From positions 211,367 through 275,366 of IMG/VR virus record IMGVR_UViG_3300021959_006010: a DNA stretch of 64,000 nucleotides; one strand, written 5' to 3'. Below are positions 1-54,050 of this stretch, one piece after another (the stretch's first letter is position 1; every line of letters starts with the position of its first letter). The notes beneath the pieces were generated by a model. It was not told the DNA's origin. It did not search any database and worked only from the letters and a program-made list of their open reading frames with translations. The position numbers and the translations under genes were made by a program.

Positions 1-59
1 CTTGCAGCATTACTTCTCGTAAACGGATTACATTACGCAGGTGTATTATAAGTATTGCT

Positions 60-242
60 ATGGCAAAACCTAATACAAAATTTAATCTAAACGTAAGAGA
101 CTTAGAGCTGATTGAGTCAGCTCTATTCCTATTTCAAACAAATGCAGATGATGCGAGCAAACGTGAGATACAAGAACTTCGAGCAAAACTGCATCATCAA
201 AAAGTTTGGTATAGACCAAAAAAAGATTATGTTAGTGGTTGA
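60..242 (+). CDS. hypothetical protein
   Basis: 60-aa ORF; TAAGTA-N5-ATG late-promoter-like leader. Confidence 0.7.
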   Translation: MAKPNTKFNLNVRDLELIESALFLFQTNADDASKREIQELRAKLHHQKVWYRPKKDYVSG

Positions 243-267
243 CAAACACTAAATAATACGTTACATT
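239..267 (+). promoter_or_regulatory. sigma70-type promoter with a late-type TAAATA box in its spacer
   Basis: TTGACA 239-244, 17 nt, TACATT 262-267; TAAATA at 250. Confidence 0.6.
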
Positions 268-309
268 AATAATGTAGCCAACTACACACATACACAGAAG
301 GAGAATATT

Positions 310-624
310 ATGAGCGTAGAAACAAAGTACGGCGAAACTATCTTGAAACAAACACAAGAGATTGCAGATATGTTCAAGCAAGCAATGCCAAAAGTCACAA
401 CAAATAAAAATGGATACGAAATCCGCACCAAGGTGCTAGAAATGGCACAAAACAATGTATGGCAAGATTACCACGCCAAACTAGGTGCGTTTGAAACTGC
501 TGTTACTAAGGAAGGTGACGAAGTTGTAACTAAAGTGTCAATGCCAGAAGTACCAGGCGTTGATGCTGTAATGGAAGCAGCTGAGAAGTTTTACGATTTT
601 GTAAACGGCAAAACTAATAAATAA
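310..624 (+). CDS. hypothetical phage protein
   Basis: 104-aa ORF with AAGGAG RBS. Confidence 0.8.
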   Translation: MSVETKYGETILKQTQEIADMFKQAMPKVTTNKNGYEIRTKVLEMAQNNVWQDYHAKLGAFETAVTKEGDEVVTKVSMPEVPGVDAVMEAAEKFYDFVNGKTNK

Positions 625-688
625 AAGTACAATAATAACTATTACCTTTTTAGGGCATAGCCCTTTATTATAATAATTTACAACAAGC

Positions 689-2839: not shown

Positions 2840-2879
2840 ATGTTAAACTCCATTGTTACGTATTTAGTTAAATAGGATT

Positions 2880-4079
2880 ATGATAGATAAAGAACCTTTT
2901 GAACAAGTAATAGAAACTCTAAAACAAGAAGGCAAATATCGAGTGTTTAACGATATACTTCGAGAAAGAGGAGATTTTCCAAAAAGTATATGGTATGGTC
3001 CGTATGCTATTAAAAATATTACTAATTGGTGTTCAAATGACTATCTCGGCATGGGTCAAAACAAAGTTGTTATTGATGCTATGCACACTGCACTTGACCA
3101 AACAGGAAGTGGGTCAGGTGGAACTAGAAACATTGGCGGCACATCACATTATCATGTAGCGTTGGAAAGAGAACTAGCGTCTTTGCATAGCAAGGATGGT
3201 GCGCTTTTATACTCGTCAGCGTATGTTGCCAATGAGTGGTCACTAATCGCTTTAAGCAAGATCATTCCCAACATTGTGTTCTTGAGTGATTCAAAAAATC
3301 ACGCAAGCCTCATACAGGGTATCCGGCACAGTGGTGCTGACAAGTTAATTTGGCAGCACAATGATATGAGCGATTTAGAGGAGAAATTGGTACAGGTTGC
3401 CGCCAGGAATCAAGTCCCCTGCATTGTATTCGAGTCCGTATATAGTATGGATGGCGATGTGAGTCCAATTTCTTCGATCTGCGATCTAGCAGACGCTTAT
3501 GGTGCTATAACCTATATTGACGAAGTCCACGCTGTAGGGTTGTATGGAACAGGTGGAGCAGGGTATCTAGAACATCTAGGTATTCAATCAAGAGTTGATA
3601 TAGTTAATGGTACATTAGGTAAGGCCTTTGGTGTTCAGGGCGGTTATATTGCAAGTAACGGGACCGTCGTAGACGCAATTCGCAGTATAGCAAGTGGATT
3701 TATTTTTACTACCAGTATGAGTCCTGTGATTTGTGCTGGCGCCCTAGCATCAATTAAATATTTACGAGACCATAACGAACTAAGAGAACAACACCAAGAA
3801 AGAGCAGCTACACTAACACGTATGTTAAAAGAAGCTGATATCGAAATACATGCAGATGCATGTACCCATATTGTTCCTGTTATGGTGCGTGATGCTGTAC
3901 GTTGTAAAGCCATGAGTGACTCGTTGCTTAACGACTATGGTATATACATACAACCGATCAACTATCCGACAGTTGCGGTTGGAGAAGAGCGTCTTCGCAT
4001 CGCGCCTACTCCGTTACATACTGATGCGATGATGAGCGACCTAGTTGTCGCACTAAGAAAGGTCTTTAATGCAAATTAA
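2880..4079 (+). CDS. hemA: 5-aminolevulinate synthase (PLP-dependent, class II)
   Basis: [57 protein letters not shown] (PLP Lys), [17 protein letters not shown]. Confidence 0.95.
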
Positions 4080-6434: not shown

Positions 6435-6651
6435 ACTTCTTTCCCTTGATTTTCTTACCACCTACTTTGACACGTTTTTTGCCCAGTTTGTGACTTTTGT
6501 TTCCGTCACGTCGACGATAGCCTTGCGATTTGCATGATGCGAGTGCGCTGGCACCCAGCGCCGAGTCCGGCTTTGATGATGTGCAAAGGCTGCGGCTAGC
6601 TTGCCAATCCTCTAGATCTTGTTCGCTTGTGAATACTTCTTCTACTCTCAT
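6406..6651 (-). CDS. hypothetical basic protein (possible internal head protein)
   Basis: TAAATA-N5-ATG; acidic N-terminus, Lys/Gly-rich C-terminus. Confidence 0.7.
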   Translation of the reverse strand: MRVEEVFTSEQDLEDWQASRSLCTSSKPDSALGASALASCKSQGYRRRDGNKSHKLGKKRVKVGGKKIKGKKYGGPLPDWS

Positions 6652-6665
6652 ACAGTTATTTAGTC

Positions 6666-6881: not shown

Positions 6882-6939
6882 GGGAGTTCTCCTTGATCAG
6901 TTTTTGAAACGTGTACAAATATTTATACTAAGTATGAGT

Positions 6940-7251
6940 ATGAATATGAAAAGCGAACCCACTGTGGGCAAACTAGAAACAGTCAACAAATACACACCCG
7001 AAACCATCACCTCAGGGCAATCATACGCATGTCTCTACTCAACACGCATACAGTTAACTGAAGATGGTCGCATACCAGAACCAGGCGAAGCTGCACCAAG
7101 ATCAGAACCTCTAACTGGCTTTGCTGTGATACATCAGAGAGATTTAAACAATCGTCGTCTTACAGTAGTAGATGTTAACCTTGCTATTGAACTAGTGGTA
7201 GATTTTGATGATGTGTGGGACATTGACGAAGCTGTATTCCAAGACGCCTGA
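6940..7251 (+). CDS. hypothetical protein
   Basis: start re-assigned to the ATG 5 nt after TAAGTA (6929-6934). Confidence 0.6.
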   Translation: MNMKSEPTVGKLETVNKYTPETITSGQSYACLYSTRIQLTEDGRIPEPGEAAPRSEPLTGFAVIHQRDLNNRRLTVVDVNLAIELVVDFDDVWDIDEAVFQDA

Positions 7252-7300
7252 AAGGCTTTAGCCCAAAACAAAAGACCCCGCTGTACGTGTAAATACTAGT

Positions 7301-7507
7301 ATGAAACTACTACTACACAGAGAACTCACATGGCGAGAAGAATGCTTTGTACACGCTCTTACAGGCGGTGACTATGACATCACACCTAGAGTTACTCATG
7401 ACGAAATCTCACAGTACGAAATGCACATACCAAGTGATGCGCTTAATAGTAGAGACACTACACTACTGTTATTAGCACTAAGTGAATGTGTTACACGTGG
7501 CGAGTAG
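7301..7507 (+). CDS. hypothetical protein
   Basis: TAAATA-N5-ATG. Confidence 0.6.
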   Translation: MKLLLHRELTWREECFVHALTGGDYDITPRVTHDEISQYEMHIPSDALNSRDTTLLLLALSECVTRGE

Positions 7508-8032: not shown

Positions 8033-8148
8033 GTGTAGGGTGTTCAAGTTCTGGCGTCTTTTGGTTTCTTTTAAAAAAATGGTTGACAGGTTGTGGTTTT
8101 GATCATATACTATAAAGACAGTTAGGGTAACACACAGAGGGAAATCAC

Positions 8149-25179: not shown

Positions 25180-25214
25180 ACTATTATTATAGCGTGGTTA
25201 GTTTAAAATGTCAA

Positions 25215-25991: not shown

Positions 25992-26025
25992 AGTAATTGT
26001 ATTTATTGGATTTATTAAATAAAAA

Positions 26026-26397
26026 ATGTTATTAAAAGATATACAAGAGAACTTTCCTTTTATTAGTGTTATAAGTTACGGCGGCGCAGAGTATGTCGGG
26101 ATTATAATTAATCAAGACCAATGGGTAACTTCTATGTACATCTATACAGATTTGAGATCCGAAATCGATAAGATCGAATTTTTAGAACTAGGAGATGTAT
26201 GGTGGTGGGAGTCAAATAGGATGTTACCTATTAATATTTTTCTTAAAGAAGAAATGGAAAAATTTGTTTATGCAATTACAACAATGAACTCAAAAAACGT
26301 AGTTGTAAAAGCAGGGCCGTGTGTTAATTTAAACAATCTTAACATTAAGAGAGTTAAAAGAAAAAATGTACAACTTGTAAGAAAGCCTAAGGACTAA
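26026..26397 (+). CDS. hypothetical phage protein
   Basis: TAAATA-N4-ATG; WWWESNR..PINIFL. Confidence 0.75.
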   Translation: MLLKDIQENFPFISVISYGGAEYVGIIINQDQWVTSMYIYTDLRSEIDKIEFLELGDVWWWESNRMLPINIFLKEEMEKFVYAITTMNSKNVVVKAGPCVNLNNLNIKRVKRKNVQLVRKPKD

Positions 26398-33282: not shown

Positions 33283-33313
33283 AAGTTAATTATAACTTAA
33301 GATTAAGAAAAAG

Positions 33314-34072
33314 TCAAGATCTTTCTATATCTTCTTCAGTGCAGTCAGTACCATATTGAATTTCTACTAACTTTAAAGGTTCAGAAGATTCGTTAGCAAG
33401 CTGATGCCATGTGTTTGCAGGAATATGCAAATTTTGGTGCTTTGTGTAAACGCCGTAAAGTTCTACATCAGTTGCAGTATTTAAAGTATAAACTGTTGCA
33501 GTTCCTTGATCAACAAACCAGTGCTCGCTTCGTTTTTGATGGCGTTGCATTGATAGATGTTGTCCTGGTTCTACTGTTAATTCTTTCACTTTTACTTCCT
33601 TTCCTGATCTATGCAAGACTCGATAATATCCCCACGGCCTTTCAGTCTTGTCAGTTTTCCAGTCTTCTAATAACCAACTGCTTGAATTCTTTTTATTTTC
33701 GCCGCCGACGCCAAACACAAACTCTACATCTGTAAATTTCATTTCCGGTATATTAGAGCGTGATCGATCACCGCCATTTGCGAATACAACTTTTGTCCGA
33801 CTGCCCTTTGTAGATAGTACTTGAAATATTGCATTATTAGCAGTATCATCTTCGTCTCGAAAACCAATAACTTCGTCTACACATGCAAGTTCTTTTATAA
33901 TTGCACAACGTTCTTCAAAGGGCATAAAAGGCCTGCCTTTTTTACGAGCAAGCCATTCGTCTGAATTAACACCTACCACAAGATGATCGCCTAATTCTTT
34001 TGCTGATTTAAAATATTCTATATGTCCACTATGCAGTGGATCAAAACCACCAGTAACTAAAACTACCTTCAT
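33314..34072 (-). CDS. cytidylyltransferase-like + mannose-6-phosphate-isomerase-type cupin fusion
   Basis: GGFDPLHSGH, GVNSD..L.RKKG, ANGGDR, NSSS; ERPWG.Y, LS.QRH..RSEHW, EIQYG....EEDIER. Confidence 0.85.
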   Translation of the reverse strand: MKVVLVTGGFDPLHSGHIEYFKSAKELGDHLVVGVNSDEWLARKKGRPFMPFEERCAIIKELACVDEVIGFRDEDDTANNAIFQVLSTKGSRTKVVFANGGDRSRSNIPEMKFTDVEFVFGVGGENKKNSSSWLLEDWKTDKTERPWGYYRVLHRSGKEVKVKELTVEPGQHLSMQRHQKRSEHWFVDQGTATVYTLNTATDVELYGVYTKHQNLHIPANTWHQLANESSEPLKLVEIQYGTDCTEEDIERS

Positions 34073-37020: not shown

Positions 37021-38751
37021 TTATCTTAAACCCGCTAACTCTCTCATTCTGTTGTATTCAAAGTCTTGTTCTGGTTCTTTATAACCAAATTTTTCTGAGA
37101 CTAGGTTATTAATTTGTTCAATAAACGCCTTAGCTGGTTCTATAAACTCTTCGCCATAATCTTTCTCTACCATGGTAAGAACTGCTGTTTCTCCCTTAGG
37201 GAATTGTCCGGTGTGCCTATCAAAGTAACTTAGTATAAACTCGCCTAATGGAGTCTTTTGATCCTTTTCTAGTGTAATTTCATCACCGTCTGGACCTTGT
37301 ACCTTGTCGCCTTTTTTCTTGCCATCCATTTTAGCCTTGCGTATTGCGTGTGCATATGCATTGCCTTCACCCATGCCGTAATCGTCTATAATGTGGTCGT
37401 GCATACGTTGTTCGATTTCGTCGTGATCATCATCTGGATGCCATCCATTATCAACGGCTACATCATCATACATATCTTGTAGATAGTTTTGTATGTCCGG
37501 ACCCATTTTGCCTCTTAATGCATCTGATAGAAGCTCTCCACTGTCATCAGCTGCAATCTTTTCCATTGCTTGGATAAGCTGATCTTTCATTGAGCCTTCA
37601 GCAAACTGTCCTAATGATTGATCAAATAGCTCTTCTAAATCATCTTCTTCTTTTACACATGAGCCTTTTTCGCCACGCTTTTTACCAGGAACTTTTTTGT
37701 ATCCATCCCAGCACTTGTCATACATTTTATCGTTACCGTGACGTTCGCCTTCGTCTACTAAATCCTCTGGACCTAGTTCTTTTGCTTTATTTGCTTCGCC
37801 TACTAGATTGTAAATGTATGGAAATACATCTTTTAATTCTTCGTTAAACTGACGAATTGTAAGTTGGTCAACCCAAGAATCTTGTATGTCTTGTGGTACG
37901 TCTTCAAATACTGGAGATTCAAAATTTGCAATAGCATCTTCATAAAAACTTTTCTTTTGGAGACTTTCAATAGTTTTCTTTACAGTGCTAATGCGTTCTT
38001 TAACTACATCCATATATTCGCTTAGACTTTCTGCCATTACAGCAGAACGACCCATATAAGTTTTAAACTTACGTAGTTTGCTCATTTCTTCTGACATGCT
38101 TACAATATGTTTGCCAAAATCATCGTAAGCATTTCCGCCTTCGCTTACATGACGAGCCATTGCTCTTGCACCACTTAAATGTTTAAACGGATATTTAAAA
38201 CGTTCACCTTCGGCACTTTCGATGTAAATAGCGCCTACTTTTTGTGTACGTCCAGTAGCACTTTCTTGGTTAATATTTTCTGTGTGCTTAATAATTAAAC
38301 GTGCATTGTCTATATCTTGATAACTTACACGGCCTGTTCCGTATAGCTTCGACTCGTTCATTTGTTCGTCTCCAAAAGTATTTTTTGCAAGGTATTGATA
38401 ATCTCTTTTTTCTAAATTTGATTTATTAATATTTCTTGTATTAAAATTTAACATACGTTTTTTACTAAATTTACGCAATTCTTTTAAGAAGTTATACCAA
38501 TCTTTTTTTGATAATTCAGTTTCTCCTTCAACAACGTCGGTGGAGTACATAACTGTAATACCATTTTTTTCATCTAAACTTACACTAATTTTTCCTAAGT
38601 CAGCATCTTTGCCTTTATAAGGAAATTCAAAAAAACGAGCTTCAGTTGGTTCTGTAGTTACGTTGCCTTGCTCGTTGCCGATTGTAACTTCAGGAAACCT
38701 TCCTCGTATTTTTGAAAATAATTCTTCTGCTATGTTATTTAGATCCATCAT
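37021..38751 (-). CDS. hypothetical head/core-associated protein
   Basis: TAAATA-N4-ATG; Glu-ending segments, KCWDGYKKVPGK..SCVK, C-terminal RMRELAGL. Confidence 0.65.
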   Translation of the reverse strand: MMDLNNIAEELFSKIRGRFPEVTIGNEQGNVTTEPTEARFFEFPYKGKDADLGKISVSLDEKNGITVMYSTDVVEGETELSKKDWYNFLKELRKFSKKRMLNFNTRNINKSNLEKRDYQYLAKNTFGDEQMNESKLYGTGRVSYQDIDNARLIIKHTENINQESATGRTQKVGAIYIESAEGERFKYPFKHLSGARAMARHVSEGGNAYDDFGKHIVSMSEEMSKLRKFKTYMGRSAVMAESLSEYMDVVKERISTVKKTIESLQKKSFYEDAIANFESPVFEDVPQDIQDSWVDQLTIRQFNEELKDVFPYIYNLVGEANKAKELGPEDLVDEGERHGNDKMYDKCWDGYKKVPGKKRGEKGSCVKEEDDLEELFDQSLGQFAEGSMKDQLIQAMEKIAADDSGELLSDALRGKMGPDIQNYLQDMYDDVAVDNGWHPDDDHDEIEQRMHDHIIDDYGMGEGNAYAHAIRKAKMDGKKKGDKVQGPDGDEITLEKDQKTPLGEFILSYFDRHTGQFPKGETAVLTMVEKDYGEEFIEPAKAFIEQINNLVSEKFGYKEPEQDFEYNRMRELAGLR

Positions 38752-38761
38752 AATGTATTTA

Positions 38762-40342
38762 TCAATAGTTGCTGCTAACGAAGATAGGCATAGGTGCCTC
38801 ATAATCTTCTAAATCTTCTGCTTGATTAAATGTATTATAAACTCTAGGATCCCAGTCCTTTAATACATCCATCATTCTAATTGCTAAAAGTGTTGCACTA
38901 ACTAAATCGTCAGTTAATCCAGGCTTTGCCTGATAACTAGATCCAGTTGCTACAAATCCTTTTAATTCTGATATAAAAGGTTTTGAGTGTATAACCATTT
39001 TATCGTTTTCTACCATAGTCTTTAATCGACTGCATGCTGTAACTTTAGTGCTATGCGTTGTATTAAATCCTTTACGGAACTTACGCACATGTCCTTTTCG
39101 AATAGGTTCAGACACAAATAGTCCTGGTATATTCTCTTCCCCAAAATCGTTTATAACGATTAAGCATGCTTCTCCTATGCCGTTATTTTCTACACTCCAA
39201 TATATGCCTGTAGGATTACGTGTTTCTTGTTCTATATATTTGCATATATCTGCAAGTACACGTATCTGTCCAGGTATAGCAGTTTGATTGTGTTGCCATT
39301 CTGCTACTTGTTCGTATGTAGGCAATTCAAATACTTGTATAGCAGCATAATCACCGCCTGTACCCATACTAGGATCTAAAGCAATAGCATATGTGTATTG
39401 GCTGGTAGGTTTTTTATACCAACGTGTTTGACCCATATTTAATGTAGGTGAGTCGCCTTCCATTGCTGCTAGTTTGATACTGTTAATAAGTGTTTCGTCG
39501 AATACTAGGAACTCGCATCCATATTCACGACGGAATTTTTCTTCACCAATACGTCCAATCTCTGCTGCTTTCCATTCTTCATCACGGTCTGGATGTTCGT
39601 CCCACTTTGATACAAACGATCTAAATCCATTGACACCTAGATCGTTTTCGTTTCCGTGATCATCAAAACGTTGTTCTGCTTGTTTCCAAATAGTAGCAAA
39701 TGTATCTTCGTCTGAGTTAGGTGTGCTAGTAATAATTGCTTGACCACCTGTTGCTAGTGTAGGTGATATTGAAGTCCAAAACTCTTCCGCAATGTTAGGC
39801 TGCACAAATGCAAACTCGTCACAGTATAGTAGCGAGATAGACAAACCACGTCCTGTGTTGCCTGTTGTTGTTTGACTTATAATACGCGAACCGTTTTCAA
39901 ACTCAATGCTGCCCTTGTTGTAACTTGTAACACCTGCTCTAATATGGTCTGGACAAGTTTCGTATACATAACGAATACGTGCCATAATCTCTTGCGCACC
40001 TGTGTATTTGTGTGCAGCAACAAGAATAGTCTGATCTGGATTAAACATTGCATACCAAGCAAGATAGATAGCAGCACAAGTAGTTTTACCTGTCTGTCTT
40101 GGCATCATATTAATATTAAATCGATATTTGTGATATGTTTCCATTAAACCTAACTGATACTCGTAAGGTTCAAAAAGTAATTTACCTTTTACTGGGTGTT
40201 GAATGTATGCAAAGTTTTTAGCAAAATACAAATAGCCGTCATTAGGATCCATGCAAGCAGCAAGTTCTTCAATTTGTGCATTTGTATATGTTTCTTTAGT
40301 ATTAGCTTTTTTAGTTAATACGCCATCTAATGATTTCGACAT
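38762..40342 (-). CDS. terminase large subunit (gp17-like)
   Basis: PRQTGKTT, LYCDEFAF, ITSTPN, FRREY.CEF, ALDPS.G.GGDY, ENN..G, DDLV. Confidence 0.95.
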   Translation of the reverse strand: MSKSLDGVLTKKANTKETYTNAQIEELAACMDPNDGYLYFAKNFAYIQHPVKGKLLFEPYEYQLGLMETYHKYRFNINMMPRQTGKTTCAAIYLAWYAMFNPDQTILVAAHKYTGAQEIMARIRYVYETCPDHIRAGVTSYNKGSIEFENGSRIISQTTTGNTGRGLSISLLYCDEFAFVQPNIAEEFWTSISPTLATGGQAIITSTPNSDEDTFATIWKQAEQRFDDHGNENDLGVNGFRSFVSKWDEHPDRDEEWKAAEIGRIGEEKFRREYGCEFLVFDETLINSIKLAAMEGDSPTLNMGQTRWYKKPTSQYTYAIALDPSMGTGGDYAAIQVFELPTYEQVAEWQHNQTAIPGQIRVLADICKYIEQETRNPTGIYWSVENNGIGEACLIVINDFGEENIPGLFVSEPIRKGHVRKFRKGFNTTHSTKVTACSRLKTMVENDKMVIHSKPFISELKGFVATGSSYQAKPGLTDDLVSATLLAIRMMDVLKDWDPRVYNTFNQAEDLEDYEAPMPIFVSSNY

Positions 40343-40354
40343 ATTGTATTTACT

Positions 40355-40382
40355 CAAAAAAATAGCGTCCGAAGACGCTATT
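40355..40382 (-). terminator. UUCG-loop terminator
   Basis: AATAGCGTC-TTCG-GACGCTATT then a T run on minus. Confidence 0.8.
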
Positions 40383-43595: not shown

Positions 43596-44635
43596 TATAC
43601 ATTGACTCCTGTTTGTGCAACAAATGCATCAACTAAAGCAGAAGGTACGTTTGCTCCTGATGCAATTGCCGTAGCAATTATGTCTGTATCTTGCTCTGAT
43701 AGAGAAACACCTGGTACAAGTTCTGGCAAATTCGCTGCTGCGGCTTGTGTTATATTCTGTACTGTTGACAGTTGTGGTCCGCCTGCTGCTGTTGCTGTTG
43801 TTACTAGTGTGTTTATTGTAGGAGTAAATGCTCCTGACGGAGAAGTGGTTAAGTTCGGATTAAATGCTGTTGGAGTATTATCTACCGGTGCACCAATAAC
43901 ATTCCATGCTTCTGATACGCTAAATCCGGAATATTCGTTGCCGCCTAGTGGGCTATCAACTACGTCATATCTTCTAGTAGCAAATGTTGCAGGATTATCT
44001 ACATCAATAGTGCCTCTTGAATAGAATACACTTTCGTAGTTAATTTCTAAGTTGTTTTCAACTATTCCAGTCCCGTCTGACTGATCCATAGTGTCATGTC
44101 CCCATCTTTCTATTACAGGATTAACTAATGTAAATTCTGTAAACTGTTGACGAGAAAGTTGAAATAACTTTATATTTTCAAAAAACGGTTCTTTAATAGG
44201 ACTTTCTAAACCATAAGTTTTTCCGTCATCGCCTTTATAAACGTTATCTTTTCTAAAAGCAGTTGGATCTCCAGCATGTAATCCGTCTCTAAAATAAAAT
44301 TTATAGTAAGATTCTAACAATAGTGTTGTTACTCCTAAATTATCATCGTGCATTGATATTTTTACTGGAGTATAAGTTATTTTTGTTTGTGTAATTTTCT
44401 TTCGATTGTATTGATTTTTAACCTGTAGTTCTGCATTATACTGCGGAAGATCTACAGTTTTACATAGCATGTTAATTTCTGCTTGATACTTATTAGCTAA
44501 TTCCGGAGCAAGTTGTCTTGCCGAATTTGAAAGATTAAAATTCACAAAATAGAGAAATTTATTCTTAGGAGCCAATGCATATGCATTGTCTATATAAAGT
44601 CGTGCAGCGTGTTGAAAATCTCTTAATACAGTCAT
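43595..44635 (-). CDS. tail-tube-like baseplate protein (gp48/gp54-like)
   Basis: K.VDLP...NQYNRK...Y.P...HDD gp19-like signature; downstream of tube. Confidence 0.6.
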   Translation of the reverse strand: MTVLRDFQHAARLYIDNAYALAPKNKFLYFVNFNLSNSARQLAPELANKYQAEINMLCKTVDLPQYNAELQVKNQYNRKKITQTKITYTPVKISMHDDNLGVTTLLLESYYKFYFRDGLHAGDPTAFRKDNVYKGDDGKTYGLESPIKEPFFENIKLFQLSRQQFTEFTLVNPVIERWGHDTMDQSDGTGIVENNLEINYESVFYSRGTIDVDNPATFATRRYDVVDSPLGGNEYSGFSVSEAWNVIGAPVDNTPTAFNPNLTTSPSGAFTPTINTLVTTATAAGGPQLSTVQNITQAAAANLPELVPGVSLSEQDTDIIATAIASGANVPSALVDAFVAQTGVNV

Positions 44636-44673
44636 ACTAATATTTATCTGTTACTATTAACTGCGTATATAAT

Positions 44674-44721: not shown

Positions 44722-45363
44722 TTAACCAGTTACCTGATCTGTATCTCTTAACTGTACTCCGTTAGGATCACCAACGCCTTCGTTGTTACCAATTCCGCCA
44801 TTGCCAAACTGGATGGCGTTATCGTAACGAATGCTTAGTGTAACTGTTGCTGGATCATTAGTTGCATATGCTAAACTGTTGTAGTTAGCATTTTCAACGT
44901 AGCAACCGTAAACTTCCCATGCTTCAAGTACAGTTGGTGCATTTGTTCCGTTACCGCCGTCTAGCATTTCGATAATTGTTCTAAACTTATAGTCTGCACC
45001 TGATGCTGCACTTGCTTGCTCCATAAAGTCGAATTGCTTTTGTAGCTGCTCGCCAACTTTACGTTGCACATTGTTGTTAACATCGTCGCGCATTGTTAGT
45101 GTAATTGGTTCCCAAGTATGTTTACCTGCTAGGTAACTTCTTGAGTTATAAACATCTAATGTAATTTGCTCAAAAGTTACATTAGGTCTAGTAACATCCA
45201 CTACCTGCTTAGTTAATTCAACAAGCTCAGTGCCCCCTGTTCCAAAACCGTCTAGTGTCACTCTAAAGCGATACTGTAGTTTTGGCATCAACAGACCCTG
45301 GCTAGAAGAACTTTGATCGCTAGCTAGTGGAACTGTGATTTTTGATAATGATGAGATTGACAT
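44722..45363 (-). CDS. tail tube protein (gp19-like)
   Basis: YRFRV, V.RP.V.F, YLAGK.TW.PITL..RDD, LSIRYD; follows sheath. Confidence 0.85.
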   Translation of the reverse strand: MSISSLSKITVPLASDQSSSSQGLLMPKLQYRFRVTLDGFGTGGTELVELTKQVVDVTRPNVTFEQITLDVYNSRSYLAGKHTWEPITLTMRDDVNNNVQRKVGEQLQKQFDFMEQASAASGADYKFRTIIEMLDGGNGTNAPTVLEAWEVYGCYVENANYNSLAYATNDPATVTLSIRYDNAIQFGNGGIGNNEGVGDPNGVQLRDTDQVTG

Positions 45364-45432
45364 TTAATTTTTCTCCTGCTCACTAGTATTTATCAATGTG
45401 TGGGCCTTCGAAAAGACCCACACTATAATACA

Positions 45433-48400: not shown

Positions 48401-48714
48401 TTGCTTACACCTAAGAATGAGTATGCTGCTTGAAGTCCGTATTCGTTAAGTTCGCCTGCGTTAATTGGGTTATTATTAGCATCAGTATAAAATACCGGAT
48501 CGCCAAATAAGTCTGCCAAATCACGCTGTGAGGTAAGTAGATATGGCTTACCTGCATTAGCTTTTATTGTACCTGCTGCGGTACCTGTTCCGCTACCGTT
48601 TGTTTTATTTTCGGCAGACGCAACAAAAATCATTGGTACGGTGCCTGGGGCCGCTGGTGTATAGAACGATTCGTCTATTACATTAACCTCAACACCTGGT
48701 GATACTAGTGCCAT
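45433..48714 (-). CDS. contractile tail sheath protein (gp18-like) with large insertions
   Basis: LVSPGVEV..IDES, PWFAPAG.RRG, RD.LY..KINPI, GQKT, ALDRVNVARL, FEPND, CDESNNTP, P.KAIEFI. Confidence 0.95.
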   Translation of the reverse strand: MALVSPGVEVNVIDESFYTPAAPGTVPMIFVASAENKTNGSGTGTAAGTIKANAGKPYLLTSQRDLADLFGDPVFYTDANNNPINAGELNEYGLQAAYSFLGVSNRAWVVRADVDLSKLNPQSEAPQDDPANGAYWLDTQVTKWGAFEWNAAPVTTTGGQTFGLQAPIVITDETKTIGSAPYTPKASVGSVGDYAVVAVSNVIRLYYKSAGNAAGLTAGQWVEVGSENWKASWPAHTGSGPDASFTASGEDFSVSIDGGAAVPVAEVVGTAADQVAAFNTLLAADGVSAALVNGIVEIYSNGGVVTINEGGGDFAARLGIVPGTYNAPSLVIAPHTAVPEFGPDDLDAPTGSIWIKTTTPNSGADYRLKQWNDSTKLWNTKEISLYESNVKALYNLDRAGGGANLTTNSVYVQWNTEGNSPATAGFRLYSRVTTGATTVTSAKIILNTATVGSHTITISESDNGSDTMSTPVSVTFTTDSSVNDAETIAGAIASAGLQNVTADVDSQNRVVISHSQGGEIQLVDDGASTILAQIGFQAYDPNIAASTVNLYAHPTAANTYVATLWKALEYTAADDEPGTLAAQGELWYNSIVDEVDMMVHNGTDWKGYRVVNPDTNTAGPMVASGAPTQQTDGTPLVDGDIWIDTSDLENYPTVYVYENAGTAAAGWKLRDATDQTTPNGVLFADARYNTAGANSDEAGSIAELAESDYLDPDAPDPALYPKGMLLWNLRRSGFNVKRFERNYIDVNGDNIRQNDEAMDAYYPHRWVTDSPNQPDGKGSFGRLAQRSVVVKQLQAAVNNNDEIRDDESRVFNLMATPGYPELIGEMISLNYDRKLSAFVVADTPARLTPDATSLNDWATNVRGAVEDNDVGAVSFDEYVGMYYPWGFTSDNAGNNVVVPPSHMALRTIALNDQVAYPWFAPAGTRRGGVTNATSSGYVNNEGEFVAVALNEGQRDTLYENKINPITFLNGAGLVVFGQKTRARNASALDRVNVARLIVYMRGRLDALARPYLFEPNDKITRDQIKTAAEALCLELVGQRALYDFLVVCDESNNTPARIDRNELYLDIAIEPVKAIEFIYIPLRIKNTGEIASL

Positions 48715-48827
48715 GTTTTCTTTCTCCTATCGAGTTGGTCTTTGTTAGTAGTATTTAGCGTATATAGATAAAAATGCATAGGTAAACAGCTATAAAAAGG
48801 GACCGAAAAGGGCAGCTAAATATAACT

Positions 48828-49169
48828 ATGAGACCACTATGTGTAAATTGCAGACAAAAACCAGCTGCTATAAATTATTATAAACAAGGCAAGCCTTATT
48901 ACCGAAAGAAATGCGAATCTTGCACTAGATACGGAGGCAAAGGAAAGCAGCCTCCTAAGTGGCATTTGTATGGTTACACAAAAAAATCACATTGCGAAAA
49001 GTGTGGATTTGATTCAAAACATCTTGAACAGTTTGATGTTTATCATGTAGACGGAGATTTAAATAATTGTCGTCCGAGCAATCTTAAAACTATTTGTGCT
49101 AATTGTCAAAGATTAATACAAAAAGAAGGTTATAAATGGAGACAAGGAAATTTAATTCCTGATATGTAA
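48828..49169 (+). CDS. HNH-like Zn-binding protein
   Basis: CEKCG...V.HVDGDLNN...NL..ICANC. Confidence 0.7.
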   Translation: MRPLCVNCRQKPAAINYYKQGKPYYRKKCESCTRYGGKGKQPPKWHLYGYTKKSHCEKCGFDSKHLEQFDVYHVDGDLNNCRPSNLKTICANCQRLIQKEGYKWRQGNLIPDM

Positions 49170-49685: not shown

Positions 49686-49744
49686 ATATTAATCTCCGTA
49701 AAATATTCTTATATTATACGAGAAAAATGTATTGTTGTCAACCG

Positions 49745-50057: not shown

Positions 50058-50840
50058 TTAACCTATTAGGAATCCGTAGCCTGTACCGCCTGCTACTGCC
50101 ATTGAAACATCTTGCTCAAGTTTTTCCATTTCAGATTGTGCTTCAGCTTTTAACGTGTCGCCATTTAAACTAGTACCACCTTGAGGGCCTGCAATAGTAG
50201 CAAACTTTGAACGTGCTTCGCCTAGCATATATTTACAACTTGCAAGTGTATAATCTTTAATCCACTGGCTTGCAAGATAATCATCAAGTAACTGCAATGT
50301 AGGACGATAGTTATAAGCAAAAATTAAAATTTCTTCGTCGCCTCGAGGTCTTTGCAAAATTGTTAATTTTTTGTTAGTGTTGTTCCAGGTAAATTCCATA
50401 AAGCTACCAAACATACGTCCTACAAGTTCTTGATATCCTGCAAACATATCATATGTTGCTAATCCGCCCATTTGTGTAGATCCTGCTAAAAGGTATGTAT
50501 TAGTAAATGCTAAATTGAATGGTTCAAAAAGAGATCCGCCACCGCCGTTGCCAGTACGAGATCCAATTGATCTTCTGTATAATTTTCTTACTTCGATAAC
50601 TTCGTTTGGAAGTATATATTCGTTTTGATCTTCTATCATAGATAAAAACAAATAACTTTCTTCAACAGAGTGATCTGATCTCTGTCGATATTTTGAAAGT
50701 GCTTTGTTAAGTGCAGTTTCGTAATGTACAGGGTCAAGTTCGACATCTATCATGCCGCCGCCTAGAAATGCATTAACATAATCATAGACTTCTTGTTTCT
50801 TAGTTATTAGCTGTTGTTTTTGTAGTTCAATATCTGACAT
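50058..50840 (-). CDS. neck protein (gp13-like)
   Basis: LG...IDVEL, W.KDY.LA..K..LG.ARSKF....GP.GG..LNG. Confidence 0.8.
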   Translation of the reverse strand: MSDIELQKQQLITKKQEVYDYVNAFLGGGMIDVELDPVHYETALNKALSKYRQRSDHSVEESYLFLSMIEDQNEYILPNEVIEVRKLYRRSIGSRTGNGGGGSLFEPFNLAFTNTYLLAGSTQMGGLATYDMFAGYQELVGRMFGSFMEFTWNNTNKKLTILQRPRGDEEILIFAYNYRPTLQLLDDYLASQWIKDYTLASCKYMLGEARSKFATIAGPQGGTSLNGDTLKAEAQSEMEKLEQDVSMAVAGGTGYGFLIG

Positions 50841-50881
50841 ATAGAAGTTCTCCGTATAGTATTTATCGAATAAATATGTAT

Positions 50882-52141
50882 ATGCCAAGACTTAGTTTAT
50901 ACAGACCAGAAAAAGGCAACGATTACGATTTTATAGATAAGCAAATCTATGAGATGTTTTCTGTTGGCGGAACAGATTTATACATCCACAAGTACATCGG
51001 TACTGACGACGGAACAACCGTCAAGGATGAGACACAAATTCAAGATCTAATGTTTCTTGAAAATAGAGACAGAAAATACGATCCTGACATTTATACAATA
51101 CGAGGTGTGTATAATGTACAAGACATTGATTTTGATCTAAGTCAATTTGGATTGTTTTTAAGCAATGACACACTTTTTCTTACTGTGCATATTAATAGCA
51201 GTGTAAAAAGTATCGGAAGAAAAATTATGTCAGGAGATGTAATTGAACTTCCTCATTTAAAAGACGAGTATGCATTAAATGATTTCGGAAGTGCATTAAA
51301 AAGATTTTATGTAGTTGAGGATATAAATCGTGCAGCAGAAGGTTTTAGTCCTACTTGGTATCCTCATTTGTATAGATTAAAACTTAAACAAATTGTTGAT
51401 AGTCAAGAATTTGCCGATATTTTAGAAAGACCAGAGAACGAAGATAATTTCGAAGGCGATTATGATCCTGCAACAACATATGCTGTTGGCCAAGTAGTTA
51501 AATATAAAGGCGATCTGTACGAAGTTACTAACGAAACTACTGGTAATTTACCTACAGATACTAACTTTTGGAAACCGTTTGAAGAAAACACATTAAGAGA
51601 TTTGTTAAGTACATACGAAAAAGAAATGCAAATAAACAATGCAGTTGTATCTGAGGCAGAAGCTGCGGCTTCTAAGTCAGGTTACGATGTTAGTCATTTT
51701 TACACTGTAGCAGTTGACGAAGACGGTCAAGTCGAATTACAAACAGTAGACGAGACAGAAATAGATGCTAGTGCAAGCACTTATTTTGCCGACGGCGTAT
51801 ATGGAAGACCGGATAGACACGGCTACGATGGCTATTTAATTGGTGATAATAATGCACCAAACGGAGAATTATTTGGCAGCGGAATACAATTTCCTATGGA
51901 CAATATGCCAGGAGATTATTTTTTAAGAACAGATTTTTTACCGAATAGATTATTTAAATTTGATGGGAATAGATGGGTGAAGGTACATGACGCAGTAAGA
52001 CACAATATGTCTAATACTGATACTAGACAAACGCAAAAAACATCGTTTATCAATAATACTAATACTAATACAATCGGCGGCGAAACTGTGGAAGAACGTC
52101 AGAGCTTGTCAAAAGCACTTAGACCAAAGGCGGATAATTAA
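50882..52141 (+). CDS. neck protein (gp14-like) with inserted carbohydrate-binding-like module
   Basis: LS.FGL...D.LF, G..GD.I.LP; insert YDPATTYAVGQVVKYKG..Y. Confidence 0.65.
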   Translation: MPRLSLYRPEKGNDYDFIDKQIYEMFSVGGTDLYIHKYIGTDDGTTVKDETQIQDLMFLENRDRKYDPDIYTIRGVYNVQDIDFDLSQFGLFLSNDTLFLTVHINSSVKSIGRKIMSGDVIELPHLKDEYALNDFGSALKRFYVVEDINRAAEGFSPTWYPHLYRLKLKQIVDSQEFADILERPENEDNFEGDYDPATTYAVGQVVKYKGDLYEVTNETTGNLPTDTNFWKPFEENTLRDLLSTYEKEMQINNAVVSEAEAAASKSGYDVSHFYTVAVDEDGQVELQTVDETEIDASASTYFADGVYGRPDRHGYDGYLIGDNNAPNGELFGSGIQFPMDNMPGDYFLRTDFLPNRLFKFDGNRWVKVHDAVRHNMSNTDTRQTQKTSFINNTNTNTIGGETVEERQSLSKALRPKADN

Positions 52142-53607
52142 TGCAACATTTTTATGACGCACAGATAAGAAGATATATCACTCAAATGATTCGCATGATG
52201 AGTGGTTTTAGTTATAAAGACGGACAAGGTCGGCTTAAAACTGTTCCAGTAATGTATGGAGATCTTACAAGACAGGCTGCAAATATTATTCGAGATAACT
52301 CTGAAAATAAAATTCCAAGTGCTCCTAGAATGAGCGTATACATTACAGGCCTTGAGATGGATAGAACTAGGACTGGTGACAGCACACTAGTTAGCAAAAT
52401 GCACATTAGAGAACGTGCATACGATGCTAACGGTCAAGAATATCTAAACGAAGAAGGAAAGAACTACACTGTAGAGCGTTTAATGCCTAGTCCTTATATA
52501 TTAAGAATGAATGTAGATATTTGGGCTTCAAATACTGACCAAAAACTTCAAATAGTGGAACAAATATTAACATTGTTTAATCCAAGTCTTGAAATACAAA
52601 CAACTGATAACTATATTGATTGGACAAGTTTAAGTGTAGTTGACCTTGACGGGATTACATGGAGTACTAGAAGTATTCCAGTAGGTGTTGATTCAGAAAT
52701 AGACGTAGCACAACTTCAGTTTAGTACTCCAATATACATTAGTCCTCCAGTAAAAGTAAAAAGACTTGGCGTAATTACAAATATTATTACTAGAGTGTTT
52801 GACGAACGCACAGGTGATATTAATTTAGGTCTAAGTGGTCCAGAAATGTTAGCATATAGCGAAAATCAATTACCTATGGATTTTGAAACAGAAACACAAG
52901 TAAATGAAAACGGAGAGATTGATATAGTTACTAAAAACACAATAGATTATACTTTTGCAAATCAATCTAACCTGTCGACTACATTCCGAGACTACGGTGT
53001 TTATGTGTTAGGAAACGAGGCGCAAATTATATACGACGGTAAAGTAGGCGAAGTTGACTGGGACAGAGTTATACTGGCTTATCCAGGAACATATCAAGCA
53101 GGATTAAGTAAAATAGTTCTTAAAAACAGTTCTGATCCTGATAGTAATATTATAGGATATATTACAGTTAATTCTTTAGATAACACGAAAGTCCTTGTTA
53201 GTTGGGATCAAGACACTCTACCAAGTGACACTATTATACAAGGTCCAATAAGAAATAACGGTAGCATTGATTATATCATTGATACTACTAGATTTGATCC
53301 ATCACAGGATAAAACAGCAGGTGTTAGATTACTTCTTATTACAAGCATAGGCGACACTGTTAATATAGACGGTCCAGATGCATGGAAAAATAACGACGTT
53401 ACTGACTTTGTTGCAGACGAAAATGATATAGTCGAATGGGATGGAGCAAATTGGAATATTATTTTTGATGCATCAGAAACTACTGATGTAACATATGTTA
53501 GTAATCTTAACACAGGAGTTCAATACAAATGGACTGGCTCTCTCTGGATACAATCTTACGAAGGTGAGTATTCAGAAGGTGCTTGGATGCTATATCTCGA
53601 AAGCTAA
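52141..53607 (+). CDS. tail sheath stabilizer/terminator (gp15-like)
   Basis: HFYD.QIRRY, VP.MYG, PRMS...G...D..R, P.PY, QIVEQIL..FNP. Confidence 0.8.
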   Translation: MQHFYDAQIRRYITQMIRMMSGFSYKDGQGRLKTVPVMYGDLTRQAANIIRDNSENKIPSAPRMSVYITGLEMDRTRTGDSTLVSKMHIRERAYDANGQEYLNEEGKNYTVERLMPSPYILRMNVDIWASNTDQKLQIVEQILTLFNPSLEIQTTDNYIDWTSLSVVDLDGITWSTRSIPVGVDSEIDVAQLQFSTPIYISPPVKVKRLGVITNIITRVFDERTGDINLGLSGPEMLAYSENQLPMDFETETQVNENGEIDIVTKNTIDYTFANQSNLSTTFRDYGVYVLGNEAQIIYDGKVGEVDWDRVILAYPGTYQAGLSKIVLKNSSDPDSNIIGYITVNSLDNTKVLVSWDQDTLPSDTIIQGPIRNNGSIDYIIDTTRFDPSQDKTAGVRLLLITSIGDTVNIDGPDAWKNNDVTDFVADENDIVEWDGANWNIIFDASETTDVTYVSNLNTGVQYKWTGSLWIQSYEGEYSEGAWMLYLES

Positions 53608-53615
53608 TTATTAGT

Positions 53616-54050
53616 ATGGAAGATGTAATAGTATGTAGTGGTGCTTTATTCTATTCTAGAAAATCTAATAGAATTTTGTTAATTCAGAAAGCAGAAGGAA
53701 AACACAAAAATACTTGGGGTCTTGTTGGCGGAACTACTGAAAACGGCGAAACTCCTTGGCAGGGGTTACAAAGAGAAATTAAAGAAGAAATAGGATTTTT
53801 GCCAACAATTATAAAAACACTTCCTTTAGAAAGTTTTGTAAGTAATGATCATAAGTTTAACTTTTACACATATCTTTGTGTTATTGAAGAAGAGTTTATT
53901 CCAAAATTAAGTAAAGAACATAAAGGTTGGGCATGGTGTGTTATAGAAAATTGTCCTAAACCTTTGCATCAAGGGTTGCGTAGTAGTTTTGGTAATCGAT
54001 CAATTAGAAATAAACTTAATACAGTATTCGAAATTATGGATTTATTATAA
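53616..54050 (+). CDS. NUDIX hydrolase
   Basis: GG..E.GET...L.RE..EE.G Nudix box. Confidence 0.9.
   Translation: MEDVIVCSGALFYSRKSNRILLIQKAEGKHKNTWGLVGGTTENGETPWQGLQREIKEEIGFLPTIIKTLPLESFVSNDHKFNFYTYLCVIEEEFIPKLSKEHKGWAWCVIENCPKPLHQGLRSSFGNRSIRNKLNTVFEIMDLL

What the first reader, a model, noticed from the sequence alone, without database searches (positions are those of the whole stretch)
49..53618. Many late genes appear leaderless: TAA(A/G/T)TA box 4-5 nt before the ATG
Seen: TAAATA-N5-ATG at 2880 (hemA), 7301, 48828, 50882 and minus-strand 6651, 44635. N4 spacing at 26026, 38751 and 40342 (terminase). TAAGTA-N5-ATG at 60 and 6940, and TAATTA-N5-ATG at 53616. Primase (25179) and 33282 have TTGAC-N17-TATAAT-N6-ATG. 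Established knowledge: T4 late promoters are TATAAATA with +1 a few nt downstream. Inference: these mRNAs start at or next to the AUG, so they need no SD and would be immune to the anti-RBS RNA, giving a three-tier initiation code (GAGGGC early, AGGAG high-copy, leaderless).
Basis: partly seen in the sequence, partly recalled or inferred. Interest (0 to 1): 0.6.

Follow-up and report, generated by a model that had tools for sequence, protein, structure and literature searches.

The report
Leaderless genes behind phage late promoters
In this uncultured jumbo phage and hundreds of its environmental relatives, a T4-like late promoter box (GATAAATA) or a classical sigma-70 promoter sits exactly where transcription would begin on the A of the ATG of certain genes, so these genes are very probably read from leaderless mRNAs without a ribosome-binding site, although no RNA data could be found to prove it.

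Summary
All 14 patterns are in the sequence as described. TAAATA-N5-ATG occurs 6 times in the window (1.5 expected; 0 of 100 shuffles reach 6), and all 6 open an ORF.

In the 275-kb record, the distance from TAAATA to the next long-ORF ATG falls into two groups: N4-5, or N17-37 with a Shine-Dalgarno (SD) sequence between. Both groups share the consensus G-A-TAAATA-Y. The N4-5 genes have no SD and use ATG almost exclusively.

In 240 related IMG/VR loci the layout is kept gene by gene while the N4-5 letters vary:
- tail tube: 47 of 50
- terminase: 24 of 26, directly behind a covarying terminator
- the gene after terminase, a virion protein (50882), an HNH-like ORF and an 81-aa ORF
- sheath: always leadered (49 of 49)

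Primase and a 424-aa gene keep TTGAC-N17-TATAAT-N6-ATG (65 of 68; 7 of 7).

A gp55-family sigma is absent from this 77%-complete record but present in four relatives.

Sites 26026, 60, 6940, 7301 and 53616 are unsupported or ambiguous. The "three-tier code" and "anti-RBS immunity" ideas are untested. No RNA runs were listed, so the transcription start sites remain inferred.

Verdict: a real feature, and a new variant of known kinds (T4-type late promoters; leaderless late mRNAs as in phage phiYS40).

The parts
44633..44646 (-). Late promoter box TAAATA (44646-44641), N5, then the ATG (44635) of the tail tube gene 43595-44635. Leaderless type.
   Evidence: 47 of 50 unique orthologue upstreams keep TAA[AG]TA-N4/5-ATG; the other 3 have TAAATA, an SD leader and GTG. 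SD energy +0.4 kcal/mol.
40340..40352 (-). TAAATA (40352-40347), N4, then the ATG (40342) of the large terminase gene 38762-40342. Leaderless type.
   Evidence: 24 of 26 unique relatives keep it. Orthologue alignments start at this Met, not at the TTG at 40357.
40354..40382 (-). Intrinsic terminator directly upstream of the terminase promoter box: 9-bp stem, 4-nt loop, run of seven T.
   Evidence: One search finds it. In one search, 5 of 9 pairs show compensatory changes in 21 sequences. It leaves at most about 11 nt, with no SD, for any terminase leader unless there is read-through.
38749..38761 (-). TGA stop of terminase, then TAAATA (38761-38756), N4, then the ATG (38751) of the 576-aa virion structural gene 37021-38751. 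Leaderless type.
   Evidence: 25 of 25 relatives have GATAAATA 4-7 nt before the aligned Met; 13 of 23 unique ones at N4-5 and the rest at N7. PHROG virion structural protein.
48817..48830 (+). TAAATA, N5, then the ATG (48828) of a 113-aa ORF with a weak HNH_3 match below Pfam's cut-off. Leaderless type.
   Evidence: 20 of 21 unique relatives.
50871..50884 (+). TAAATA, N5, then the ATG (50882) of the 419-aa virion structural gene 50882-52141. Leaderless type. The ATG at 50876 overlaps the box and is not the start.
   Evidence: All 54 orthologue alignments start at this Met. 30 of 35 unique upstreams keep the arrangement while the N5 letters vary.
50838..50867 (-). Divergent partner of the previous part: GATAAATA (50867-50860), a 19-nt leader with GGAG, then ATG (50840). 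A leadered late promoter 1 nt away from the leaderless one.
   Evidence: One search gives the sequence. Relatives show the same back-to-back pair (vsp_50882 rows).
6649..6662 (-). TAAATA, N5, then the ATG (6651) of the 81-aa ORF 6406-6651. Leaderless type.
   Evidence: 18 of 26 unique relatives.
2869..2882 (+). TAAATA, N5, then the ATG (2880) of the class I/II aminotransferase gene 2880-4079. Leaderless type in this genome, variable in relatives.
   Evidence: 17 of 57 unique relatives keep it; the others have longer leaders or no box.
25177..25214 (-). TTGACA, N17, TATAAT, N6, then the ATG (25179) of the primase gene 24196-25179. Sigma-70-type leaderless geometry.
   Evidence: 65 of 68 unique relatives (55-91% identity) keep the exact spacing while the spacer and the N6 letters vary.
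33280..33317 (-). TTGACT, N17, TATAAT, N6, then the ATG (33282) of the 424-aa gene 32008-33282. Sigma-70-type leaderless geometry.
   Evidence: 7 of 7 unique relatives with an alignable N-terminus.
25989..26005 (-). TAAATA (26005-26000), N8, then the ATG (25991) of the 258-aa gene. Near-leaderless here, N4/5 in most relatives.
   Evidence: 51 of 67 unique relatives have GATAAATA-N4/5-ATG.
48712..48757 (-). Comparator: a leadered late promoter. TAAATA (48757-48752), N37 with AGGAG, then the ATG (48714) of the tail sheath gene.
   Evidence: 49 of 49 unique relatives are leadered-late.
45361..45392 (-). Comparator: GATAAATA, N23 with AGGAG, then the ATG (45363) of the 213-aa gene.
   Evidence: 41 of 43 relatives are leadered-late.
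7290..7303 (+). TAAATA, N5, then the ATG (7301) of a 68-aa ORF. The motif is present but could not be tested.
   Evidence: No homologue in 80 related loci.
26016..26028 (+). TAAATA, N4, then the ATG (26026). Probably coincidental.
   Evidence: 0 of 68 relatives have it. What is conserved there is TATTTAT, the reverse complement of the promoter of the divergent gene that starts at 25991.
53605..53618 (+). TAATTA, N5, then the ATG (53616) of a NUDIX gene. Ambiguous: the TAA is the stop codon of gene 52141-53607.
   Evidence: Relatives have TAA(T/C/G)TA at a fixed distance, and sometimes a second in-frame TAA. TAATTA is not enriched genome-wide.
49..62 (+). TAAGTA, N5, then the ATG (60) of a 60-aa ORF. 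Unsupported.
   Evidence: Few homologues, and none with the motif.
6929..6942 (+). TAAGTA, N5, then an ATG (6940) inside the longer ORF 6796-7251. Unsupported.
   Evidence: 16 homologues, none with an N-terminal alignment at this Met. The frame is open for 51 codons upstream.

Best explanation
The phage has two working promoter classes.

- **Late class.** A T4-type late promoter with consensus G-A-TAAATA-Y and no visible -35 element. It is presumably read by host RNA polymerase carrying a phage gp55-family sigma.
- **Early/middle class.** A consensus sigma-70 promoter, TTGAC(A/T)-N17-TATAAT.

Each class comes in two layouts.

- **Leadered layout.** The box is followed by a 12-32-nt leader with an AGGAG-like SD.
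- **Leaderless layout.** The box ends exactly one promoter-to-start distance before the ATG: N4-5 after TAAATA, N6 after TATAAT. Transcription then begins on, or within 1-2 nt of, the A of AUG. The mRNA has no SD and must be translated by 5'-AUG recognition, the 70S/IF2-dependent route.

Which layout a gene uses is gene-specific and conserved.
- Leaderless: tail tube, large terminase, the virion gene after terminase, virion gene 50882, an HNH-like ORF, an 81-aa ORF, primase and a 424-aa gene.
- Leadered: sheath and its neighbour.

Shown here: motif, spacing, absence of SD, start-codon bias, conservation, the terminator in front of terminase, and a sigma gene in relatives.

Inferred: that the box is a promoter, that +1 is the A of ATG, and the mode of translation.
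For: 1. **Spacing.** It is bimodal, with an almost empty gap.
   - Genome: N4 = 5 and N5 = 14, N6-16 about 0-3 each, then a broad hump at N17-37.
   - 80 relatives: N4 = 78 and N5 = 106, almost nothing at N6-13 apart from 13 sites at N7, then a hump at N14-36.
2. **Position.** 72 of 274 TAAATA copies lie within 60 nt upstream of a co-directional ORF start.
3. **Same element in both layouts.** In the relatives, the leaderless and leadered sets share G at -2 (81% and 77%), A at -1 (68% and 70%) and a mostly pyrimidine base after the box, 86% and 55%.
4. **No SD.** Mean anti-SD duplex energy is -1.0 kcal/mol for 24 candidates, -4.5 for 268 other genes (p = 2e-7) and -1.8 for internal ATGs.
5. **Start codon.** Leaderless sites are 248 ATG and 10 non-ATG. 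Leadered sites are 246 ATG and 31 non-ATG (Fisher p = 0.0017). In orthologues of gene 4990, most leadered forms shown start with GTG or TTG, and all leaderless forms start with ATG.
6. **Gene-specific conservation, with the N4-5 letters varying.**
   - Leaderless: tube 47/50, terminase 24/26, ORF 48828 20/21, gene 50882 30/35, primase 65/68, 424-aa gene 7/7.
   - Leadered: sheath 49/49, 213-aa gene 41/43.
   - Some genes switch between layouts among relatives while keeping the box.
7. **Terminator.** A covarying terminator ends 8 nt before the terminase box.
8. **Two spacings, one start.** N6 after TATAAT and N4-5 after TAAATA each place +1 on the A of ATG. T4 late promoters lie about one helical turn upstream of the start, at the -10 position, with no -35 conservation (PMC2988020).
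9. **Sigma.** Four relatives encode a 279-283-aa sigma matching phrog_12791 (E 1e-79 to 1e-83) and the T4 gp55 family phrog_234 (E about 1e-23).
10. **Literature on related late promoters.** ATAAATA or NATAAATA late promoters are predicted in Rak2-like phages and in cyanomyoviruses (PMC5259590; PMC2984593).
Against: - No transcription start site was observed. No RNA run holding this sequence was listed.
- No gp55-like gene is in this 275-kb record. This is explained by incompleteness: the neighbours of the relatives' sigma gene also have no match here.
- The T4 co-factors gp33 and gp45 were not detected in any of five records with T4-family profiles.
- Several leaderless-type genes sit inside co-directional gene strings, so read-through transcripts that carry these ATGs internally must also exist.
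- The host is unknown, so how well it translates leaderless mRNA is unknown.
Confidence: 0.75

Rival explanations
1. The A/T-rich box next to the ATG is a translation signal, not a promoter. It would act as an SD-independent enhancer (for example a binding site for ribosomal protein S1), or as part of a termination-reinitiation junction, on longer polycistronic mRNAs that start further upstream.
For: - Several sites lie directly after a co-directional gene. At 38751 the box follows the TGA of terminase. At 53616 the TAA of the box is the stop codon of the upstream gene. In relatives of 6651 a stop codon lies 3-4 nt before the box.
- Read-through transcripts must exist in these gene strings.
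Against: - The same 8-9-nt consensus occurs 17-37 nt upstream of genes that have their own SD.
- Many leaderless sites have no upstream co-directional gene at all: 2880, 44635, 48828 and 50882 stand in divergent or intergenic positions. Terminase stands behind a terminator.
- The sigma-70-type cases have a full -35/-10 pair at exact promoter spacing.
- The empty gap at N6-13 fits a start-site constraint, not an enhancer.
Confidence: 0.12
2. The box is a late promoter, but transcription starts a few nucleotides further away than assumed or at scattered positions. The mRNAs would then have very short leaders (3-10 nt), or would be trimmed by an RNase, rather than being strictly leaderless.
For: - Spacings of N7 (the gene after terminase in 10 of 23 relatives) and N8 (25991 in the window) occur.
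- N4 and N5 both occur, so +1 cannot be the A of ATG by one fixed distance.
Against: - The start site cannot lie upstream of the box's downstream edge by more than promoter geometry allows.
- The peak at N4-5 is sharp: 184 of about 200 sites at or below N8 in relatives.
- Functionally, leaders of 5 nt or less behave as leaderless (established knowledge).
Confidence: 0.1
3. The pattern is chance in an A/T-rich genome, together with biased choice of start codons.
For: - The genome is 37% G+C.
- The N4 class alone is not significant in the window.
- Five of the 14 listed sites have no comparative support.
Against: - 0 of 100 shuffles reach the N5 count.
- Control hexamers show no such peak.
- T4 has 10 TAAATA-N5-ATG sites, and none is at an annotated start.
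- Conservation is gene-specific in hundreds of diverged relatives.
Confidence: 0.03

Closest known systems
T4 late transcription (TATAAATA promoters read by host RNA polymerase with gp55, co-activated by gp33 and the gp45 clamp)
   Same: - An 8-bp A/T box at the -10 position with no -35 element.
- It stands in front of structural and packaging genes.
- A gp55-family sigma is present in relatives of this phage.
   Different: - The first position is G/N, not T.
- About half of the boxes sampled in relatives abut the start codon. In T4, none of the 10 TAAATA-N5-ATG sites is an annotated start.
- gp33 and gp45 were not detected with T4 profiles.
Predicted ATAAATA / NATAAATA late promoters of Rak2-like jumbo phages (CBB, GAP32) and T4-like cyanophages (S-PM2, Syn9)
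   Same: - The same motif, in front of structural genes.
- A gp55-like sigma is present. gp33 and gp45 were not found in CBB either (PMC5259590; PMC2984593).
- The nearest cultured relatives by sheath sequence are Atu_ph07, PA5oct and Rak2-like phages.
   Different: - Those papers do not report leaderless genes.
- In the 42-kb structural region of PA5oct, all GATAAATA-like boxes are followed by SD leaders, with none at N4-5.
Thermus phage phiYS40 (most middle/late mRNAs leaderless; IF2 raised and IF3 lowered during infection)
   Same: A large myovirus whose later genes are expressed from leaderless mRNAs starting at the AUG (PMC3594737).
   Different: - A different phage lineage, host phylum and promoter type.
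- Its host belongs to Deinococcus-Thermus, where a -10 box next to the ORF is common (PMC12340547).
- The phiYS40 start sites were mapped experimentally; here they are inferred.
Cellular leaderless genes recognised by a -10 box 5-7 nt before the start codon (Deinococcus-Thermus, Actinobacteria; the signal modelled by GeneMarkS-2)
   Same: The same computational signature: a -10 element at a fixed short distance from the ATG, no SD, and ATG preferred.
   Different: Here it appears in a phage, with two different promoter classes. The layout is conserved per gene across a viral family.

Membership tests
T4-type (gp55-dependent) late promoter | Conserved 8-bp A/T-rich box (T/N)ATAAATA upstream of late genes | tested here: met
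   - Consensus G-A-TAAATA-Y in both layouts.
- 72 of 274 copies lie within 60 nt upstream of co-directional starts.
- The box stands before sheath, tube, terminase and virion genes.
- It is almost absent from the early cluster at window 8000-20000: 1 copy in 12 kb.
T4-type (gp55-dependent) late promoter | No conserved -35 element | tested here: met
   - No conserved column in the 18 positions upstream of GA-TAAATA.
- At terminase, that space is taken by a terminator hairpin.
- Only 20 nt upstream were tabulated, so a far-upstream element is not excluded.
T4-type (gp55-dependent) late promoter | Phage encodes a gp55-family sigma factor | tested here: inconclusive
   - Not found in this 77%-complete record with phrog_234, phrog_12791, T4 gp55 or Atu_ph07 gp694.
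- Found in 4 of 5 related records.
- The sigma gene's neighbours also have no match in this record, so that region is missing.
T4-type (gp55-dependent) late promoter | gp33 co-activator and gp45 sliding clamp | tested here: not met
   - phrog_254 and phrog_223 give no match in this record or in 4 relatives, one of them 100% complete.
- The profiles are T4-centred and rang in no control genome, so divergent homologues are not excluded.
- The same absence is reported for phage CBB.
T4-type (gp55-dependent) late promoter | Transcription starts about one helical turn downstream of the start of the box, late in infection | not testable with these tools
   No RNA run was listed.
Leaderless mRNA | Primary 5' end on, or within a few nt of, the A of the AUG | not testable with these tools
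   No RNA run was listed. Looking for contig ends at start codons gave no signal.
Leaderless mRNA | -10 element at a fixed distance of 4-7 nt from the start codon | tested here: met
   TAAATA-N4/5-ATG and TATAAT-N6-ATG show sharp peaks in the genome and in 240 related loci.
Leaderless mRNA | No Shine-Dalgarno sequence | tested here: met
   none of 24 candidates reaches -6 kcal/mol, against 38% of other genes. A canonical anti-SD was assumed, because the host is unknown.
Leaderless mRNA | Strong preference for AUG over GUG/UUG | tested here: met
   3.9% non-ATG at leaderless sites against 11.2% at leadered sites (p = 0.0017). Seen within orthologue groups.
Translational coupling (termination-reinitiation) | Upstream co-directional ORF stops at or within a few nt of the start codon | tested here: not met
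   - This holds only for 53616 (stop inside the box) and loosely for 38751 and 6651 (stop 10-15 nt upstream).
- It is absent at 2880, 40342, 44635, 48828, 50882, 25179 and 33282.

The most novel reading that the evidence does not exclude
A cosmopolitan, uncultured family of about 350-kb jumbo phages would use the choice between leaderless and SD-led initiation as a conserved, gene-specific layer of late-gene control. For example, tube, terminase and the gene after terminase are leaderless, while the sheath is SD-led. The phage might couple this to remodelling of the host ribosome, perhaps through its own bS21 homologue or changes in initiation factors, so that the two mRNA classes are translated at different times or ratios. 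That would extend the phiYS40 idea to T4-type late transcription.
Probability: 0.15. Interest if true: 0.8.

Novelty: new variant of a known kind. Interest (0 to 1): 0.55.

Why it matters
- **Gene calling.** Longest-ORF or SD-based callers misplace starts in this phage family. In this window, 38802, 40357 and 50876 are called instead of 38751, 40342 and 50882. A promoter-aware leaderless model would correct hundreds of environmental contigs.
- **Biology.** T4-type late promoters can be fused directly to start codons. A widespread environmental jumbo-phage family keeps this for specific genes (tube, terminase, primase), while the sheath keeps a strong SD. This points to deliberate control of translation mode, or to a host with efficient leaderless translation.
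- **Testability.** The result gives defined promoter fragments and a candidate sigma (279 aa in a relative) for in vitro transcription and for reporter tests.

Tried and rejected
- **RNA evidence.** The look-up of sequencing runs (kind rna) on window 40001-50000 listed no run.
- **Contig ends.** I looked for related contigs that begin exactly on a start codon, as transcript-derived assemblies might. There was no signal.
- **gp55 in this record.** Negative with phrog_234, phrog_12791, Pfam Sigma70_r2 and r4, and phmmer with T4 gp55 and Atu_ph07 gp694. I do not read this as absence: the gp47-like neighbour and the other neighbours of the relatives' sigma gene also have no match.
- **gp33 and gp45.** T4-family profiles gave no match in five records.
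- **Near-identical phage.** Megablast against cultured phages gave no match.
- **PA5oct.** No leaderless late genes in its 42-kb structural region, so the trait is not general in the wider clade.
- **'Three-tier by copy number'.** Rejected, because tube and sheath differ in layout although the virion contains similar numbers of each.
- **Site 26026.** Rejected as a conserved site (0 of 68).
- **Sites 60, 6940 and 7301.** Left unsupported.

Full report
**Where the window lies.** The window is the last 64 kb (211367-275366) of a 275,366-bp IMG/VR virus record. The record is estimated 77% complete and has 37% G+C. No cultured phage is near-identical. By tail-sheath protein, the nearest cultured relatives are Agrobacterium phage Atu_ph07 (44% identity), Pseudomonas phage PA5oct and the Rak2-like jumbo phages. 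This is the "group 2.2" clade, described as lacking its own RNA polymerase but encoding sigma factors (PMC7824862).

- TAAATA-N5-ATG occurs 6 times in the window against 1.48 expected, and no shuffle out of 100 reaches 6.
- The N4 form occurs 3 times against 1.40 expected, which is not significant alone.
- Every one of these nine ATGs opens an ORF.
- I also counted, without any gene calls, the ATGs that open at least 80 codons at each distance after TAAATA. The whole record gives 5 at N4 and 14 at N5, 0-3 at each of N6-N16, and a broad hump at N17-37. Control hexamers show no such peak.
- TAAGTA shows a smaller N5 peak (5). TAATTA shows none.

**What the box is.**
- 72 of the 274 TAAATA copies in the record lie within 60 nt upstream of a co-directional ORF start.
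- They fall into two layouts. In one, ATG follows after 4-5 nt. In the other, it follows after 17-37 nt with an AGGAG-like SD between.
- Both layouts share the extended consensus G-A-TAAATA-Y in the 80 relatives: G at -2 in 81% and 77%, A at -1 in 68% and 70%. So this is one element used in two ways.
- It matches the T4 late promoter TATAAATA, which sits at the -10 position about one helical turn before the start and has no -35 element (PMC2988020).
- It also matches the NATAAATA / ATAAATA late promoters predicted in cyanomyoviruses (PMC2984593) and in the Rak2-like phages CBB and GAP32 (PMC5259590).
- The box is nearly absent from the early-gene cluster, with 1 copy in window 8000-20000.

**Why the N4-5 genes look leaderless.**
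- *No SD.* The 24 candidates in the record have a mean anti-SD pairing energy of -1.0 kcal/mol. The 268 other genes average -4.5 (p = 2e-7) and internal ATGs -1.8.
- *Start codon.* They start almost only with ATG. In 240 related loci (2.9 Mb), unique leaderless-type sites are 248 ATG and 10 non-ATG. Leadered sites are 246 ATG and 31 non-ATG (p = 0.0017).
- *Empty gap.* Spacings between N6 and about N13 are nearly absent. This is expected if the mRNA starts 5-6 nt after the box, because a leader must then be either absent or long enough to hold an SD.
- *Two spacings, one start.* The two promoter classes use different spacings, each the canonical one for its class. TATAAT-N6-ATG (primase, 424-aa gene) and TAAATA-N4/5-ATG both place +1 on the A of ATG.

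**Comparative evidence.** Three scans of IMG/VR each returned about 580-600 related stretches. I kept 240 loci at 55-91% protein identity. The table gives counts per orthologue group, using unique upstream sequences.

| Gene (window start) | Layout among relatives |
|---|---|
| tail tube (44635) | 47 of 50 leaderless-late; the other 3 have the box, an SD leader and GTG |
| terminase (40342) | 24 of 26 leaderless-late |
| 113-aa ORF (48828) | 20 of 21 leaderless-late |
| virion gene (50882) | 30 of 35 leaderless-late |
| gene after terminase (38751) | 13 of 23 at N4-5, the rest at N7 |
| 81-aa ORF (6651) | 18 of 26 leaderless-late |
| aminotransferase (2880) | 17 of 57 leaderless-late |
| 258-aa gene (25991; N8 in the window) | 51 of 67 leaderless-late |
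| primase (25179) | 65 of 68 keep TTGAC-N17-TATAAT-N6-ATG |
| 424-aa gene (33282) | 7 of 7 keep TTGAC-N17-TATAAT-N6-ATG |
| sheath (48714) | 49 of 49 leadered-late |
| 213-aa gene (45363) | 41 of 43 leadered-late |
| 185-aa gene (41582) | 32 of 40 leadered-late |

- The letters between the box and the ATG vary freely, so it is the spacing that is conserved.
- Genes 4990 and 2839 switch layout among relatives. The leadered forms shown often use GTG or TTG, and the leaderless forms always use ATG.

**The terminase case.** A 9-bp hairpin with a run of seven T lies directly upstream of the box. Five of its nine pairs show compensatory changes in 21 sequences. Transcripts from upstream should end there. 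The terminase mRNA can then only begin within the 11 nt that hold the box, and these contain no SD.

**Divergent pairs.** At 50860-50876 two boxes stand back to back, 1 nt apart. The minus-strand box has a 19-nt leader with GGAG before its ATG at 50840. The plus-strand box has 5 nt before the ATG at 50882. Similar pairs occur at 2861-2874 and 26000-26021.

**The sigma factor.** No gp55-like gene is found in this record. Four related records, one of them 357.5 kb and rated 100% complete, each carry a 279-283-aa gene. It matches phrog_12791 (E 1e-79 to 1e-83) and the T4 gp55 family phrog_234 (E about 1e-23). That gene's neighbours, including a gp47-like nuclease, also have no match in this record. 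The whole region therefore lies in the missing 23%. T4-family profiles for gp33 and gp45 matched nothing in any of the five records. The same was reported for phage CBB.

**Sites that do not hold up.**
- 26026: 0 of 68 relatives. The conserved sequence there is the reverse complement of the promoter of the divergent gene.
- 60 and 6940: no orthologue support. 6940 lies inside a longer open frame.
- 7301: no homologues, so it could not be tested.
- 53616: the TAA is the stop codon of the preceding gene, and the motif is degenerate in relatives. Coupling and a weak promoter cannot be told apart.

**Comparison with known systems.**
- T4 itself has 10 TAAATA-N5-ATG sites, and none is at an annotated start.
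- PA5oct has GATAAATA-like boxes in its structural region, all with SD leaders. Its published promoter set lists only sigma-70-like promoters (PMC7318152).
- Leaderless middle and late mRNAs are known from Thermus phage phiYS40, with IF2 raised and IF3 lowered during infection (PMC3594737).
- A -10 box next to the ORF is a common expression mode in Deinococcus-Thermus (PMC12340547).
- In the held library I found no paper describing leaderless genes behind T4-type late promoters.
- I therefore rate this as a new variant of known kinds.

**Limits.**
- No RNA run was listed, so promoter activity, the start sites and the mode of translation are inferences.
- The host is unknown, and a canonical anti-SD sequence was assumed.
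The three-tier code is contradicted in part, because the tube is leaderless and the sheath SD-led. Immunity to an anti-RBS RNA was not examined.

Noticed in passing
G000:C1:181826-181981 (-), outside the window; also in relatives G001 and G002: The phage encodes a ribosomal protein bS21 homologue (Pfam Ribosomal_S21, E 7e-19, above the cut-off). It has its own sigma-70-like promoter and SD, and a GMP-reductase-like ORF follows. It may bear on how the phage handles translation initiation.
   Followed up: partly
window 8500-19300 (+): A cluster of 19 small ORFs. Each appears to have its own promoter-like TATA(C/G)T element (not analysed further) and the unusual SD-like GAGGGC 3-7 nt before the start. 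TAAATA is almost absent here, which fits an early-gene block.
   Followed up: partly
window 48795-48816 (+), upstream of the box of the 113-aa ORF: An A/G-rich element of the form AAAAGGG-N5-AAAAGG is conserved in nearly all relatives, just upstream of the late promoter, in the sheath/ORF-113 divergent intergenic region. Its function is unknown.
   Followed up: no
window 49685 (-) and promoter at 49741-49713: The 177-aa gene has a perfect TTGACA-N17-TATAAT promoter with a 27-nt SD leader here. In 19 of 31 relatives the same gene has the sigma-70-type leaderless layout.
   Followed up: partly
window 38802, 40357, 50876, 50888, 53583: Longest-ORF start codons are wrong for these genes. Orthologue alignments and promoter layout place the starts at 38751, 40342, 50882 and 50840, and probably 53616.
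   Followed up: yes
end of the window / record (window 64000 = record end): The record is a fragment. The module holding the late sigma gene, a gp47-like nuclease and adjacent genes, present in relatives, has no match here. A complete relative is 357,559 bp.
   Followed up: yes
That family includes 5-aminolevulinate synthase, but the specific function was not established.
   Followed up: partly
loci L050/L049 and L062/L070 (orthologues of gene 50882): In a few relatives, the codon aligned with Met1 is ATT or ATC behind an AGGAG leader. In L062/L070 an in-frame ATG overlaps the box further upstream. These may be unusual start codons or N-terminal extensions.
   Followed up: no
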